Below, piece after piece: positions 1,040 to 64,000 of a stretch of 64,000 nt of DNA (position 1 is the stretch's first letter; the number at the start of each line of letters is the position of its first letter). Position numbers and translations under genes: made by a program. The notes under the pieces were generated by a model. The model was not told where the DNA came from, did not search any database, and saw only the letters and a program-made list of their open reading frames with translations. Source of the DNA: Octopus sinensis (lineage: Eukaryota); assembly GCF_006345805.1 (NCBI RefSeq), contig NC_042999.1, positions 94,550,001 to 94,614,000 of the forward strand, given 5' to 3'.

Positions 1040-1310
1040 TCAAGCCAGCGGGTTGTTCACCACTAAGTTATGTCATTTTTCTTCTATGGAACTGAGGTAA
1101 TGTCCTTAAATGTTCATGATTGATCGGTAGCCACTAAACACATTTCTTTCTCTACTTGTTTCTTTTTGTGCTCCTTTCTGTGGAAGAGCGTAGGCTCGAA
1201 ACGTAAAAGACTTTTTCAATTCCCGAGCGTTATAGTAATACATATGTTTGTCTTCTACACCAACTGTCTTCGTCTTTTGTTTTTTTTTCGTGAATTCTCC
1301 CTATACGTAT
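1040..1310 (+). mobile_element. Short PLE-type 3' end (solo pLTR-like) with hammerhead motif, ending in (TA)n
   Basis: Hammerhead motif at 1174-1209, then cccgagcgtt and a T-rich tail into (TA)n; homologous layout at 20040-20245. 5' boundary uncertain. Confidence 0.5.
1174..1209 (+). ncRNA. Minimal type I hammerhead ribozyme motif, core mutated (A6>U)
   Basis: CTTT-CTGTGGA-A-GAGC(GTAG)GCTC-GAAA-CG-TA-AAAG: stem I CTTT/AAAG, stem II 4 bp, palindromic stem III ACGT, GUA site after 1205. Confidence 0.6.
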
Positions 1311-1519
1311 ATATATATATTATATATATATATATATATATAATATATATATATATATATATATATATATATATATACATACATACATATATGTGTGTGT
1401 CTGTGTACATGTACTCACACATAAATATATATCTACACGTGTGTATGTGCGTATTATTGCATATATTGTCTAACCTTTATACATATCAGTCGACAATGAC
1501 TAAAGTATCACTAAGTAAT

Positions 1520-2365
1520 TTGAGAAAAAATACAAACATAGTTAATTACATTAAATAATGTATGTTCAATAACGTGAAATTCTGATTAGCATGCAGAATA
1601 ATACAGAAATTTCTTAAATCTCTGCTCGGGCACTACGCATATACATGTTATATAGATTCAAGCCCTCTTGCATGACCTTCAAAACCGCACCCCTAAATTA
1701 TTATGAATCAGAGAGTTCTGAATCTCATTACATTTGTTGTAAAACGTCTCTTCAAATTTTGGATTGTGGTCATTTGAGAGTAACGCGGTAACCTTTTTCC
1801 TGCACAGTCAGTGTAGTACTAAAACCTGAGTTTCTGATCTCTCTGGAGTGCAGAGAAGTCAGTGTCAGTGTATTATTATATGAATGCATAATTTCTCAGA
1901 AACTGTTTCCTGTAAGAACAACATCGAAGTACCTAAGAATATTTTGTGGAGGAGGATGCAGTTTTTCCAGTTTCACCTTCCATTCAAAGTAAGTCGCAGC
2001 CTCCGATTCAGCAGGCCACCTGCAGGCTTTGTTGAGTTAACGAACCTTGTCGAAGAGATTCCCTGCACCATCTGATTGTATAACATGCAGGAAAAAGTTT
2101 GCCGCATTACCGATTCATTACTCTCAAATGACCACAATCCAAAATTTGAAGAAACGTTCTACAGCAAAGGTAATGCACTATGATTCATTATAATGTAATG
2201 GTGCAATTTTGAAGGCCATACAACATGTACATACGTAGCGTCCGAGCGGTAATTTAAAGAATTTCAGTATTATTCTGCAGGCTAATCAAAATTACAAACA
2301 CTCCATTTCACGTTATTGAACATACATTCTTCAATGTAATCAACCATGTTTCCATCTTTTCTGTT
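1520..2365. mobile_element. Old foldback/MITE-like element with ~280-bp imperfect inverted arms and ~280-bp spacer
   Basis: 1520-1804 is the reverse complement of 2086-2365 (e.g. aatgtatgttcaataacgtgaaat; tgcagaataatac; cttcaaattttggattgtggtcatttgagagtaa), roughly 80% by eye with indels; no ORF or hammerhead found. Confidence 0.75.
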
Positions 2366-2388
2366 CATGAATTTCTAAAATTCGATAG

Positions 2389-2492
2389 TTGTTGTTGTTA
2401 TTATTATTATTATTATTATTATTATTATTATTATTATTATTATTATTATTATTATTATTATTATTTTATTATTATTATTACTATTATTATTG
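2389..2492. repeat. (TTG)/(TTA)n microsatellite
   Basis: Direct reading. Confidence 0.95.
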
Positions 2493-2900
2493 TCTATTCT
2501 CCATCTTTGCATATTCGGTTTGGTCTCTTGGCATCCTGTTTGCAATGTTATCACTTTTTGTTACAGATATTTGACTGCATAACCTTTCCAATTAAAATCG
2601 ATTATCATTTGACCCCGGGATGTTCATAGACTGTAAAATCTTGCTTAATGTATTATTTTAAAGTTAATTATTCCACTCTTAAGACACGCTGACCAATCTG
2701 TCTTTGTAGCAGAAAGAGATTCATATTCTCTTTTCCTACGTATGTATTCCGACATTCGTTTTAATCATTTTCTAGCTGCTCTACGCTAGTTTTGTGCTTA
2801 TAACTTTGCTGCCAACAGTTCTGTTTTAATCACATATTTTATTTGGAGAACGGCCATGTTGAATTGAAAAATTCTAATGCGGAATCAAGTAGAGCAGTAT
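2493..2900 (-). pseudogene. Possible highly decayed R4/Dong-like LINE fragment
   Basis: Minus-strand translation across stops (..WSACLKSG..; ..NRICKDGE*TII) weakly resembles the WL...CRICGD..ETI region of the 33.4-34.9 kb element; abuts (TAA)n. Confidence 0.3.
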
Positions 2901-61439: not shown

Positions 61440-62030
61440 TATTTGTATACAATAAATTTCTATGGGCAGCACAAGCATTTGGTGGCTTGGAGTCAAGTGT
61501 TGGCGCCAGCGACATATAAATATCAATAAAAAGTTGGATCTTTACAAATCACTTGTCTTACCATCCCTGTTGTATTCTTGTGAAACACAGACATATTATG
61601 AAAGATATTCTAAATTGTTAGAAAGATTTCACCAAAATGCCTTCATCGCATTTTAAACATTAAATAGAGGTCTTTTGCTCCAAATACAGATGCCCTTGCA
61701 TCTGGAAGCATCACCTCAATAAAGCTATGATTTTGAGAAACCAAACACGGTGTGGCCGTATTGTTCGAATGGTGGATGAACGCACGCCCAAACAGCTGTT
61801 TTATGGTGAGCTTGCAGAGGGGAGACGCTATCGGCGTAAACCCCCCAAAAAGGTTTAAGGACGGCATAAAGACTACTGCGAAGTCAATTGGAATGGATCT
61901 AGAGGACATAGAAACACTTGCTTTGGTTCGAGCTGGAGGGAAAATAAAACTGTGGAGTGGTGTGAAAGAAATTAAAGAGACCAGGATAACGCATGCAAGA
62001 CTCGAGAGAGATTTAAGGAAGATGCCAGGA
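61440..62030 (+). pseudogene. Older RTE (BovB-like) LINE ORF C-terminal fragment
   Basis: KLDLYKSLVLPSLLYSCET..LLERFHQ..RILNIK..RIVRMVDERTPKQLFYGEL.EG.R....PKRFKDGIK, with frameshifts. Confidence 0.8.
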
Positions 62031-62509
62031 GGTTGGCAAATCGGATGTGCAATTTATGTGGGTGTCTTTTCAAATCATTGTCTGGTTTTTAAAAACCACA
62101 TCATGTTCTAAGGTATAGGTACAGGTGGTGGTCAACTCAGAATAAGGAGTAGACAACTACCAATATATATATTATATATATATATATATATATATATATA
62201 TATATATATATATATATATATAATTTCAACAATTGAGGGTAAAATTAATTAATTATTAATCAATTTCACCAAGTATTCAGTATGTAAAGGGACCATTTAA
62301 GGCGAATTCAAATTATTACATTATATAAAAGGGCTTAGTAAAATAAATTACTTTGCCACATACTGAACTCATTAGAAATAGTAGCTAAAAAAACTTTTTT
62401 AAAACTATTTCTAATACTTAAAGAAAATCTCTCTCATATAGTGTTTGCTCAATTCAACTCACGAAAGTATGGGGGTAAAGACATTAAAAAATCAAATGCA
62501 AAGGTTATT

Positions 62510-62561
62510 TGAGAACGTACGTTTCAAGATTAGTCAACTCGACATTTCTATCATCAGCTCG
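62510..62561 (-). ncRNA. Type I hammerhead motif (mirror copy)
   Basis: Reverse complement of 62851-62902; one stem I position differs (C for T). Confidence 0.7.
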
Positions 62562-62850
62562 GAACTCCTGGTTTGGATTTGAAAACACTGAAAGTGGGAG
62601 CATACCCTTTCGGCTTCTTATCGCTTCTGAAGATCTGCTCGAAACTAACAGTGCCAGCAAACCCAAAATATGCAAGCGAAGAATTTCTGCTCTCCCCTTT
62701 CCACCAGCGTGGGTTAAAATCTATTTAATGCTTCGGATTTTACCGAAAAAGCATAGTGTTTACTGATTTCGAGCAGATCTTCAGAAGCGATAAGAAGCCG
62801 AAAGGGTATGCTCCCACTTTCAGTGTTTTCAAATCCAAACCAAGGAGTTC

Positions 62851-62902
62851 TGAGCTGATGATAGAAATGTCGAGTTGACTAATCTTGAAACGTACGTTCT
62901 CA
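62851..62902 (+). ncRNA. Type I hammerhead ribozyme motif
   Basis: TGAG-CTGATGA(62855-61)-T-AGA-AAT-GTC(GAGTT)GAC-TAA-TCT-T-GAAA(62887-90)-CGTACG-TT-CTCA; palindromic stem III ACGTACGT, GUU site after 62898; U.U at 10.1/11.1. Confidence 0.75.
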
Positions 62903-64000
62903 AATAACCTTTGCATTTGATTTTTTAATGTCTTTACCCCCATACTTTCGTGAGTTGAATTGAGCAAACACTATATGAGAGAGATTTTCTTTAAGTATTA
63001 GAAATAGTTTTAAAAAAGTTTTTTTAGCTACTATTTCTAATGAGTTCAGTATGTGGCAAAGTAATTTATTTTACTAAGCCCTTTTATATAATGTAAATTA
63101 TATATATATATATATATATATATATATATATATATATATTATATATATATATATATATATATATATATATATATATACATATATATATATATATATGCAT
63201 ATATATATATACGTATGCATGTACGTATATGTATATATATATATATATATAATTATATATTATGTGTGTGTATATATATGTATGTATACACATGTATGTG
63301 TATGCATAGCCATAAAATATATATATGCCTATGCGTACGTCATTGTCTTGCTGTGTGCGTGTGTGTGTATGCATGAATGTATGTATGCATAATCGCTAGG
63401 CAATAAGAATAAAACCAGAAGACTGTGACTATGTTATCGTTATTAGTCGCCATAATCATGTAAGAAATACTTTAAAGAATTTTCTTAGATATGAGTGACC
63501 ATATTGTTTTAATGATAATTAATACCATATTGATGTCTGACCTACAACATTGTAATTCCTGCTTCATCTTCATTTTACATTATCGCATATGCTTCATTAG
63601 ACATGAAAAATTTCGTCACTATAGAATGTTGTTATCAGTAATTGGCTATTGAATTTATTTCAGAACAGGGACATTGTATGATTTATGATCACACGGTTTA
63701 TTTTCTTGAGTCTATCGTGCCTTATACAAAAATATGAGTGGATTTTGGTAAACGCTGACTAACCACTTTATATCTATTGAGATTGGTGTAAGCATCTACA
63801 AACAAAATTCGCCTTAATCTGAAAATGCCATAACTCCCCACTGCAAAATCTCTATTAATATAGAAATCAAATTTCAAATAATATATGATATCCTAGTGTG
63901 AAAATAGTCATTACTCGATATACAATCATATGATACTCTACGAGTAAATGTAGTTGATTGATCTGATAGAAATAGCAGTTCAATCTTTGTTAAATCACAT

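What the first reader, a model, noticed from the sequence alone, without database searches (positions are those of the whole stretch)
1174..63097. A (TA)n-targeted hammerhead/Penelope system: outward-facing ribozyme foldbacks plus solo ribozyme tails, eight motifs in 64 kb
Seen: five loci with little apparent sequence similarity outside the ribozyme core (1.2, 7.6-8.1, 20.1, 43.2-49.2 and 62.2-63.1 kb; only 1.2 and 20.1 are clearly paralogous) carry type I hammerhead motifs. All have palindromic stem III (ACGT, ACAATTGT, ACGT, ACCGGT, ACGTACGT) and all end 3' in or near (TA)n. Three are inverted dimers with one ribozyme per strand. Established: PLEs carry minimal type I hammerheads with palindromic stem III that cleave as dimers, and metazoan retrozymes are tandem repeats that yield circular RNAs. 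Inference: these are several non-autonomous families mobilised by PLE RT/GIY-YIG. Their inverted rather than tandem geometry cannot release monomeric circles. Any read-through transcript makes the antisense arm first, so the ribozyme should be sequestered in long dsRNA. That would make them self-silencing ribozyme hairpins and possible siRNA/ADAR substrates, a configuration I do not recognise as described.
Basis: partly seen in the sequence, partly recalled or inferred. Interest (0 to 1): 0.9.

Follow-up and report, generated by a model that had tools for sequence, protein, structure and literature searches.

The report
Penelope retroelement remnants with hammerhead motifs
This octopus-like stretch of DNA holds a broken head-to-head pair of Penelope-like retrotransposons and several short relatives, each with the small hammerhead ribozyme motif typical of these elements and each ending at a TA repeat, which is a published pattern and not a new system.

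Summary
All eight hammerhead-like motifs are at the stated places, all have a palindromic helix III, and three loci are head-to-head inverted pairs. I found a ninth motif at 21817-21861 (- strand) and two motif-less Penelope-type tails at 60.35 and 60.9 kb. A published-style minimal-hammerhead descriptor gives 7 hits against 0.31 expected. Every motif has a (TA)n tract 39-292 nt downstream on its own strand (background 15.7%).

The 43.2-49.2 kb locus is a Penelope-like element (PLE): RT plus a C-terminal GIY-YIG nuclease with a CX4CxxC linker. It is one full-length copy and one 5'-truncated copy, both with broken reading frames. Its motif carries the known U3-A8 core variant. A covariance model built only from relatives in other organisms finds it at E = 1e-5, and those relatives show strong stem covariation and the same (TA)n ends.

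The claimed novelty does not hold. Inverted 5'-truncated partner copies, one-sided tails, (TA)n bias, U3-A8 cores and paired minimal hammerheads 100-700 bp apart on opposite strands are all published (PMC8557442, PMC4209133). Whether the short families are truly non-autonomous is open. The "self-silencing hairpin" idea is thermodynamically plausible but untested. Verdict: new members of a known kind, low interest.

The parts
43251..46673 (-). Family C, left copy: full-length-type PLE. ORF equivalent 45870->43606, with about 800 nt of 5' region at 45871-46673. The reading frame is broken by frameshifts.
   Evidence: tblastn with relative P0002 covers aa 1-752 in four frame segments.
46674..49238 (+). 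Family C, right copy: 5'-truncated PLE joined head-to-head to the left copy. RT plus GIY-YIG nuclease. The longest open stretch is 47240-48913 (557 aa), and there are five in-frame stops at 47138-47210.
   Evidence: RVT_1 and a weak GIY-YIG match. P0002 aa 23-752 aligns in one frame; the stops are. The linker KKCGRSNCATCP fits CX2-5CxxC, and NIIYVIKCSGCHQDYVGST is the nuclease motif. 721 homologues were found, mostly from molluscs.
49049..49088 (+). Family C hammerhead motif: AAGAAAU-UUGAAAA-GC[UACAC]GC-GAAACCGGU-A-AUUUCUU. U3-A8 core variant, 7-bp stem I, 2-bp stem II.
   Evidence: Descriptor hit. Model R1, built only from relatives outside the window, scores 27.5 bits, E 1.1e-5. A Logan contig 99% identical at protein level carries the identical motif.
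43401..43440 (-). Family C hammerhead motif, mirror copy in the left arm.
   Evidence: 27.5 bits, E 1.1e-5.
43220..43250 (.). 31-bp extension (tail) between (TA)n 43190-43219 and the left arm of the PLE pair. It is present at this end only.
   Evidence: no match elsewhere in the window. It fits the 30-40 bp one-sided tail described in PMC8557442.
7622..8041 (.). Family B foldback: two 210-bp arms head-to-head with no spacer and 8 mismatches (96%). The left end abuts (TA)n 7489-7625.
7916..8005 (+). Family B hammerhead motif: GAUUUAG-CUGAUGA-[58-nt stem II closed by AUACU/AGUAU]-GAAACAAUUGU-A-CUAAUC.
7658..7747 (-). Family B hammerhead motif, mirror copy. It differs at one position inside stem II.
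8042..8150 (.). About 108 bp of unique sequence between the right arm of B and the next TA-rich microsatellite. This is a one-sided extension of unknown origin.
62316..63096 (.). Family D foldback: arms 62316-62647 and 62765-63096 (2 mismatches, 2 indels) around a 117-bp unique centre at 62648-62764. The right end abuts (TA)n 63099-63211.
62851..62902 (+). Family D hammerhead motif: UGAG-CUGAUGA-U-AGA..GUC[GAGUU]GAC..UCU-U-GAAACGUACGU-U-CUCA.
   Evidence: Model R1 gives only 8.4 bits, E 9.4.
62510..62561 (-). Family D hammerhead motif, mirror copy.
62223..62315 (.). 93-bp one-sided extension between (TA)n 62173-62222 and the left arm of D.
1174..1305 (+). Family A, solo tail A1. The motif is at 1174-1209 with a mutated core (A6->U). 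The 3' end abuts (TA)n 1308-1377, 103 nt after the predicted cleavage site.
   Evidence: No inverted partner was found.
20112..20242 (+). Family A, solo tail A2. The motif is at 20112-20142 (canonical core, extra A before stem II, G10.1-C11.1). The 3' end abuts (TA)6 and then (GATA)n, again 103 nt after the predicted cleavage site.
21665..21861 (-). Motif at 21817-21861: UGAAC-CUGAAGA-U-UGCA[GACUUUAA]UGCA-U-GAAAGUACU-A-GUUCA. A TA-rich tract starts about 160 nt downstream on the - strand.
   Evidence: Model R1 gives 11.2 bits, E 1.3.
60340..60575 (+). Short PLE fragment without a hammerhead motif. It encodes the last ~60 aa of a PLE nuclease (60351-60524) and is bracketed by (TA)n 60263-60339 and 60576-60634.
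   Evidence: tblastn with 120 PLE proteins, best E 1.3e-5. Sequence.
60878..60957 (+). About 80-bp solo 3' tail related to family D. It is truncated downstream of the motif position and bracketed by (TA)n 60860-60877 and 60960-61020.
   Evidence: blastn E 3.8e-5, the best non-self hit of the D 3' end. Alignment A4.

Best explanation
The window comes from an octopus-like cephalopod genome. It carries at least eight independent insertions of Penelope-like retroelements from about six sequence families.

**Shown**
- Each family with enough 3' sequence carries a minimal type I hammerhead motif 40-290 nt before its 3' end, as PLEs do.
- These motifs lack an intramolecular helix III and have a palindrome in its place.
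- None of the nine motifs has a same-strand partner nearby.
- Both family C copies have broken reading frames.

**From the literature**
- Such motifs can only become active by pairing two copies, as in the tandem pseudo-LTR arrangement.

**Inferred**
- The elements insert by target-primed reverse transcription at nicks in (TA)n tracts.
- The three foldbacks are by-products of insertion, not a designed unit. They are a longer copy joined head-to-head to a 5'-truncated inverted copy, made either by priming from both nicked strands of the self-complementary (TA)n target or by the cDNA snapping back on itself. A non-templated tail is left at one end.
- The insertions are therefore inert remnants. 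If read through, the foldbacks would form long hairpin RNA like any inverted repeat.
For: **PLE identity**
- Pfam RVT_1 plus GIY-YIG-type motifs.
- 721 homologues, many with a precomputed GIY-YIG domain.
- tblastn shows one full-length and one truncated copy, head-to-head.

**Family C motif is a real, conserved hammerhead**
- Ten relatives from other organisms carry the same architecture in their 3' UTRs.
- On their alignment 78% of cells are paired against 54% when shuffled. The covariation score is 0.637 against 0.216 (0/500 shuffles reach it), and slid controls give 0.08-0.22.
- The 3-8 core pair covaries as C-G, A-U and U-A.
- A model built from those relatives alone finds both window copies at E 1.1e-5.

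**All families**
- Descriptor enrichment: 7 hits against 0.31 expected.
- Fixed sense orientation towards a (TA)n tract for 9 of 9 motifs.

**(TA)n and retroposition**
- (TA)n follows the motif by 50-200 nt in relatives L001, L003, L009, L026 and L028. It is absent from the tandem junctions in L004 and L029. This argues for a target and against an element-borne tail.
- The D-like 80-bp tail and the 236-bp nuclease fragment are both bracketed by (TA)n. This 5' truncation indicates retroposition.

**Literature**
- Inverted partner copies, one-sided tails, (TA)n preference and the linker hypothesis: PMC8557442.
- Minimal hammerheads, U3-A8, the extra nucleotide before stem II, opposite-strand pairs 100-700 bp apart, and solo motifs as truncated PLEs: PMC4209133.
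Against: - For families A, B, D and F there are no copies from elsewhere. Their hammerhead status rests on descriptor matches and position only.
- Model R1 scores D and F weakly (E 9.4 and 1.3) and misses A and B.
- Rfam hammerhead models find nothing.
- B and D lack the usual G10.1-C11.1 pair, and B has an unusually long 58-nt stem II.
- Predicted lowest-energy folds do not reproduce the hammerhead fold for D.
- The one-sided extensions in B (108 bp) and D (93 bp) are longer than the published 30-40 bp tail and are unexplained.
- A tRNA-like SINE also borders (TA)n tracts at 7075-7488, so (TA)n adjacency is not exclusive to PLEs in this window.
- No self-cleavage, transcription or insertion mechanism was tested.
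Confidence: 0.8

Rival explanations
1. One reading: the short foldbacks are a distinct class of non-autonomous hammerhead elements. Their inverted geometry is the functional unit, a self-silencing ribozyme hairpin that feeds siRNA or ADAR pathways.
For: - Three of eight insertions are foldbacks.
- The predicted fold of a read-through transcript buries the whole motif in a duplex of -308 (B) or -592 (D) kcal/mol.
- No PLE coding remnant is detectable in B or D.
Against: - The autonomous-type PLE in the same window has the same head-to-head architecture.
- That architecture is published as a routine product of PLE insertion.
- The unequal arms (117-bp and 858-bp unique centres) look like independent 5' truncation and not a designed hairpin.
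- A D-like solo tail exists.
- There is no expression, small-RNA or editing evidence.
Confidence: 0.07
2. B and D are foldback or MITE-type DNA transposons that target TA dinucleotides. Their hammerhead-like motifs are chance matches.
For: - The terminal inverted repeats run the full length of the element.
- Both elements sit in TA repeats, the target of Tc1/mariner-type elements.
- Neither Rfam nor model R1 supports the B motif.
Against: - The descriptor is expected only 0.09-0.31 times per window, yet both elements carry it in sense orientation at the PLE-typical distance from the end.
- D shares the U-flanked stem II seen in relatives of the PLE.
- An 80-bp D-like 3' fragment at 60.9 kb fits 5' truncation and not cut-and-paste transposition.
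- One-sided extensions are a PLE trait.
Confidence: 0.05
3. A variant of the main explanation: the (TA)n tracts are not pre-existing targets. They are 3' tails made or carried by the elements, for example by reiterative copying by the telomerase-related RT.
For: - Solo tails A1, A2 and F show (TA)n only at the 3' side.
- In head-to-head pairs both outer ends are 3' ends, so bracketing by (TA)n is expected under this model too.
Against: - Tandem copies in relatives L004 and L029 have no (TA)n at the junction between units.
- The single-orientation fragments at 60.35 and 60.9 kb have (TA)n on their 5' side as well.
- The literature treats (TA)n as the preferred target.
Confidence: 0.12
4. The near-perfect palindromes are assembly artefacts, for example fold-back chimeric long reads.
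For: The arms are 96-99.6% identical, and the indels in the PLE arms could be read errors.
Against: - Each palindrome is internal and has different unique sequence on its two sides.
- The arms carry substitutions (8 in B, 19 in C), and the centres are unequal.
- Three separate loci show the same PLE-typical layout.
Confidence: 0.03

Closest known systems
Canonical nuclease-bearing Penelope-like elements with a CX2-5CxxC linker (Neptune/Nematis type; Arkhipova 2006; Craig et al. 2021, PMC8557442)
   Same: - RT followed by a C-terminal GIY-YIG nuclease, with a Cys-rich linker.
- Strong 5' truncation.
- An inverted 5'-truncated partner copy.
- A tail at one end only.
- A (TA)n microsatellite at the insertion ends.
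- A hammerhead motif near the 3' end.
   Different: - Clade placement was read from the linker motif only; no phylogeny was made.
- No direct pseudo-LTR is present at this locus.
- Both copies have broken reading frames.
- The one-sided extensions of B and D (93-108 bp) are longer than the published 30-40 bp.
Minimal hammerheads of PLEs (Cervera & de la Pena 2014, PMC4209133; dimer cleavage also reported by Lunse et al. 2017, which I did not read here)
   Same: - Type I topology.
- No real helix III, with a palindrome at 15.2-16.2 in its place.
[quoted passage not shown]
- The U3-A8 core covariation (family C).
- Many solo motifs.
- Pairs on opposite strands 100-700 bp apart (here about 180 and 300 bp).
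   Different: - These are new sequence families in a cephalopod.
- B has a 58-nt stem II.
- B, D and F do not keep G10.1-C11.1.
- Activity is untested.
Metazoan non-LTR retrozymes (Cervera & de la Pena 2020, PMC7229834; Li et al. 2026 preprint, 10.64898/2026.07.22.740005)
   Same: - Short non-coding repeats with type I hammerheads.
- Thought to derive from PLE pseudo-LTRs and to be mobilised by PLEs.
   Different: Retrozymes are direct tandem repeats that yield circular RNAs. Here no two motifs lie in tandem on one strand, so unit-length excision is impossible.
Twin-priming inversions of LINE-1 (known from human L1; from my own knowledge, not checked here)
   Same: Two cDNAs primed from the two strands of one target would give an inverted, 5'-truncated structure with both 3' ends facing outward.
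   Different: - L1 twin priming gives an inversion inside one copy, not a near-complete palindrome.
- The mechanism has not been shown for PLEs.

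Membership tests
Penelope-like element, nuclease-bearing, C-terminal GIY-YIG | PLE-type reverse transcriptase | tested here: met
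   RVT_1 at 31.9 bits, above its cutoff. 721 homologues at E<=1e-10 with the RT/DUF8422/HTH_animal architecture. tblastn covers aa 23-752 of a 753-aa relative.
Penelope-like element, nuclease-bearing, C-terminal GIY-YIG | GIY-YIG nuclease at the C-terminus | tested here: met
   The motif NIIYVIKCSGCHQDYVGST can be read. The Pfam GIY-YIG match is weak (16.8 bits, below the 22.6 cutoff). Many full-length homologues carry precomputed PF01541.
Penelope-like element, nuclease-bearing, C-terminal GIY-YIG | CX2-5CxxC linker, which marks the Neptune and Nematis clades | tested here: met
   KKCGRSNCATCP lies upstream of the nuclease motif, and the cysteines are invariant in alignment A3. Clade phylogeny was not done.
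Penelope-like element, nuclease-bearing, C-terminal GIY-YIG | Complex tandem or inverted insertion structure with 5' truncation and a one-sided tail | tested here: met
   Head-to-head full-length plus truncated copy. A 31-bp tail at the left end only. No direct pseudo-LTR.
PLE-type minimal hammerhead | Conserved core CUGANGA ... GAAA and a non-G at position 17 | tested here: met
   Met for A2, B, D and F. C has the published U3-A8 variant. A1 fails (A6->U)..
PLE-type minimal hammerhead | Helices I and II supported by covariation | tested here: inconclusive
   Met for family C through ten relatives and model R1. For A, B, D and F no independent copies were available. A1 and A2 differ in the stem II loop and in stem I, but two sequences prove little.
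PLE-type minimal hammerhead | Palindromic 15.2-16.2 / loop 3 that allows a dimeric helix III | tested here: met
   ACGT, ACAATTGT, ACGT, AGTACT, ACCGGT and ACGTACGT.
PLE-type minimal hammerhead | G10.1-C11.1 pair and an extra nucleotide between 9 and 10.1 | tested here: inconclusive
   A has both. C has G-C but no extra nucleotide. D and F have U on both sides of stem II, as relatives L012-L016 and L026-L029 do. B starts stem II with A-U.
PLE-type minimal hammerhead | Self-cleavage as a dimer | not testable with these tools
   Needs in vitro transcription. Cofolding is only suggestive.
Rfam Hammerhead_1 and other curated hammerhead families | Match to the curated covariance model | tested here: not met
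   No hit at gathering score. Searches found no hammerhead hit at E<=10 in the 141-441-nt stretches holding D, B and C; A1, A2 and F got no such short-stretch scan. In the whole-window scan at E<=10 the 150 listed rows hold no hammerhead, but 28 further rows were not shown. This is expected for motifs without an intramolecular helix III.
Metazoan non-LTR retrozyme | Direct tandem repeats, each unit with a sense hammerhead | tested here: not met
   No two same-strand motifs are adjacent. The only same-strand paralogues, A1 and A2, are 19 kb apart.
MITE / foldback DNA transposon | Defined terminal inverted repeats with a target-site duplication and fixed ends in all copies | tested here: inconclusive
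   Duplications cannot be read inside (TA)n. A D-like 5'-truncated tail argues against this family. No genome-wide copies were available.

The most novel reading that the evidence does not exclude
Head-to-head PLE dimers may be a systematic result of targeting a self-complementary microsatellite. Both strands of (TA)n offer the same nuclease site and the same 3' primer. Reverse transcription could therefore start from both nicks (or snap back), giving outward-facing inverted pairs at high frequency, here 3 of 8 insertions. If so, this would explain the long-unexplained inverted structures of PLEs. It predicts far fewer such pairs in PLE families that target non-palindromic repeats such as (CA)n.
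Probability: 0.2. Interest if true: 0.5.

Novelty: new member of a known kind. Interest (0 to 1): 0.2.

Why it matters
- It adds cephalopod families to the catalogue of PLE minimal hammerheads.
- It gives a clean natural example of Watson-Crick covariation at the 3-8 core pair within one PLE clade: C-G, U-A and A-U.
- It shows that curated Rfam models and standard annotation miss these motifs entirely.
- Repeats of this kind, long near-perfect palindromes at TA microsatellites, are a practical hazard for assembly and for hairpin or miRNA prediction. The arms score as sub-threshold miRNA precursors.
- It does not reveal a new ribozyme system.

Tried and rejected
- **Rfam.** There were no hits at gathering score. 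The E-value scan of the whole window was swamped by microsatellite look-alikes of miRNAs. Scans of three short stretches gave no hammerhead hit.
- **Cross-family similarity.** blastn-short and nhmmer between families found none. nhmmer also missed the A1/A2 and D/60.9-kb relations, which needed a sensitive blastn.
- **Model R1 on other families.** It is specific for the ACCGGU type. It gives only marginal scores for D and F and none for A and B. Its other weak hits were rejected: 57604 is a bare AAACCGGTTGG, and 13945 has GAAATCGATC with a 6-bp stem I but no UGA core.
- **PLE coding remnants in A, B, D and F.** tblastn found none.
- **Inverted partners for the solo tails A1, A2 and F.** None were found.
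- **Free-energy folding.** Folding single motifs and homodimers reproduces the hammerhead stems for C but not for D. It was not used as evidence.
- **Repeats flanking the PLE at 42.3 and 49.5 kb.** These are plain (AAT)n microsatellites.
- **tRNA scan.** It found nothing.
- **The CTGAAGATCTGCTCGAAA motif at 62627/62767.** Rejected because it has no stem II and is antisense to its copy.

Full report
**What the window is.** The window is AT-rich (about 32% GC) and full of microsatellites. There are 39 merged (TA)>=5 tracts covering 2.5% of it, plus (AAT)n, (AAG)n, (AGAC)n and (GATA)n arrays. A non-LTR retrotransposon ORF at 57878-58765 is 89% identical to an Octopus vulgaris protein over half its length and 69-78% identical to O. 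bimaculoides proteins. The source is most likely an octopod.

**Checking the observation.**
- The strict descriptor requires CUGANGA or its U3-A8 variant, stem II of at least 2 bp, GAAA followed by a palindrome, a non-G at position 17, and stem I of at least 3 bp. It hits exactly the three inverted pairs: 6 hits against a mean of 0.087 in 150 dinucleotide-preserving shuffles.
- A relaxed scan adds A1 (core A6->U) and A2 (stem I only 2 bp) and nothing else.
- An extended descriptor that allows a nucleotide on each side of stem II adds a ninth motif at 21817-21861 on the - strand. This gives 7 hits against 0.31, maximum 2, in 200 shuffles.
- Each of the nine motifs has a (TA)>=5 tract 39-292 nt downstream on its own strand, against 15.7% of random positions. 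For A1 and A2 the distance is 103 nt in both.
- The three inverted pairs are confirmed. B has 210-bp arms, no spacer and 8 mismatches. D has 332-bp arms around a 117-bp centre. C has 2565-bp arms around an 858-bp centre, with 19 mismatches and 6 indels.
- Only A1 and A2 are paralogous.
- Rfam's curated hammerhead models detect none of the motifs.

**What the 43-49 kb locus is.**
- The right arm encodes an RT (RVT_1 above cutoff), then a Cys-rich linker KKCGRSNCATCP, then a GIY-YIG-type motif.
- It has 721 homologues, mostly from bivalve genomes and host-contaminated metagenomes. The nearest are 75% identical (an ENA scaffold) and 99% identical (a Logan contig).
- tblastn with a 753-aa relative shows that the right copy covers aa 23-752 in one frame, with five stops at 47138-47210. 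The left copy covers aa 1-752 on the - strand with several frameshifts.
- The unique centre is the 5' region of the left copy and has no similarity to the 3' UTR.
- The locus is therefore a full-length-type copy joined head-to-head to a 5'-truncated copy, with both 3' ends facing outward. Neither copy is intact as assembled.
- The stop cluster lies in a stretch where the two arms are identical, so the defect predates the duplication.

**Is the family C motif a real hammerhead?** I fetched relatives from ENA, Logan and JGI contigs.
- Ten of them carry the same layout in the 3' UTR, 100-250 nt after the stop codon: N3-UGA-N-N8-A, often a U, a 2-5 bp stem II, often a U, then GAAACCGGU (or ACAUGU), H, and a 3-8 bp stem I.
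- On their alignment (A5, which contains no window sequence), the named structure is 78% paired against 54% in shuffles. The covariation score is 0.637 against 0.216, with 0 of 500 shuffles reaching it. Slid controls give 0.08-0.22.
- The 3-8 pair is C-G in seven relatives and A-U in three. The window copy has U-A, a variant already reported for Schistosoma PLEs (PMC4209133).
- A covariance model built from A5 finds both window copies at 27.5 bits, E 1.1e-5.
- In five relatives a (TA)n tract follows the motif by 50-200 nt. In two relatives the copies are in direct tandem, with no (TA)n at the junction.

**The short families.**
- B, D, A and F share no sequence with C or with each other outside the core.
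- They share its anatomy: a sense motif at a PLE-typical distance from a 3' end that abuts (TA)n. For B and D they also share the head-to-head layout with an extension on one side only (108 bp right of B, 93 bp left of D, 31 bp left of C).
- D and F also share the U-flanked stem II seen in the relatives of C.
- Two further insertions lack a motif. One is a 236-bp fragment encoding the last ~60 aa of a PLE nuclease (60340-60575). The other is an ~80-bp D-like 3' tail (60878-60957). Both are bracketed by (TA)n. The D-like tail shows that this family occurs as 5'-truncated solo copies, as retroposons do.
- I could not obtain other genomic copies of A, B, D or F. Their hammerhead status rests on descriptor statistics and position. 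Model R1 gives only E 1.3 (F) and 9.4 (D) and misses A and B.
- No PLE coding remnant is detectable in them. Whether they are non-autonomous families or just tails of other autonomous PLEs cannot be decided here.

**Comparison with the literature.**
- Craig et al. [quoted passage not shown] The CX2-5CxxC linker is proposed to mediate this bias in Neptune elements.
- Cervera & de la Pena 2014 (PMC4209133) describe minimal hammerheads with palindromic 15.2-16.2, the extra nucleotide before stem II, the U3-A8 covariation, dual motifs about 100-700 bp apart on opposite strands, and a majority of solo motifs read as truncated PLEs. They found low in vitro activity, and only as dimers.
- The window fits all of this. 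In B and D the two cores lie about 180 and 300 bp apart on opposite strands.
- Retrozymes (PMC7229834; 10.64898/2026.07.22.740005) are direct tandem arrays. That arrangement is not present here.

**Mechanism.**
- Shown: element identity, architecture, motif conservation in family C, and the association with (TA)n.
- Inferred: insertion by target-primed reverse transcription at nicked (TA)n, and formation of the head-to-head pairs either by priming from both strands of the self-complementary target or by snap-back of the cDNA. The zero-spacer palindrome of B and the unequal centres of D and C are compatible with either route.
- Inferred: the hammerheads in these copies are inert, because no same-strand partner is near enough to form the dimeric helix III.
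The predicted lowest-energy fold pairs 80/81 and 48/48 motif nucleotides with the other arm. This is true of any transcribed inverted repeat, and it is untested here.

**Caveats.**
- The descriptors were written after seeing the motifs.
- E-values from the shortened model calibration are rough.
- A tRNA-like SINE also borders (TA)n tracts, so these tracts may be general insertion or instability hotspots in this genome.
- The long one-sided extensions of B and D are unexplained.

**Verdict.** The Penelope link and the (TA)n association are supported and already known. The claim of an undescribed configuration is not supported. These are new family members of a known kind, of low interest.

Noticed in passing
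   Followed up: yes
window 60340-60575 and 60878-60957: Two short PLE-type insertions without a hammerhead, each bracketed by (TA)n tracts. One encodes the last ~60 aa of a PLE nuclease. The other is a diverged 3' tail of family D.
   Followed up: yes
L026 2674-2703, L028 2866-2895, L029 2491-2522: Relatives of the PLE (56-60% protein identity) carry AUGAAUA in place of CUGANGA, an A3-U8 version of the core pair. With C-G in other relatives and U-A in the window, one PLE clade shows three Watson-Crick versions of the 3-8 pair. I did not check whether A3-U8 has been reported.
   Followed up: partly
window 8042-8150 and 62223-62315: One-sided extensions of 108 and 93 bp lie between a foldback arm and the flanking microsatellite. 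They are longer than the published 30-40 bp PLE tail, have no match elsewhere in the window, and their origin is unknown.
   Followed up: partly
window 7075-7488 (- strand): A tRNA-like SINE with A-box- and B-box-like sequences near 7400-7488 and an internal CA/TA microsatellite. Both of its ends border (TA)n tracts. ARAGORN does not call it a tRNA.
   Followed up: no
window 57878-58765 (+): C-terminal part of a non-LTR retrotransposon protein (RT plus PHD finger). The closest named relatives are from Octopus vulgaris (89%) and O. bimaculoides. This gives the likely host lineage.
   Followed up: partly
window 34079-34840 (-) and 50000-50629: An inverted pair of a repeat (84-92% identical, about 15 kb apart) holding ORFs of 137-253 aa with no Pfam match. 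It is probably another transposable element family.
   Followed up: no
window 47138-47210 and the mirror position in the left arm: A cluster of five in-frame stops sits in a stretch where the two PLE arms are identical. The defect was therefore already present in the RNA or cDNA that gave rise to both arms, so a defective copy was mobilised.
   Followed up: partly
window 7780-7883 and 62576-62838: The centres of the foldbacks score as sub-threshold plant and animal miRNA precursors in Rfam (47-63 bits, below gathering score). This shows how such palindromes can produce false hairpin-RNA calls.
   Followed up: no
L016 2306-2337 (+) and 2466-2489 (-): In one relative, two different hammerhead-bearing tails face each other (tail-to-tail) about 130 bp apart. 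This suggests repeated insertion into the same site in opposite orientations.
   Followed up: no
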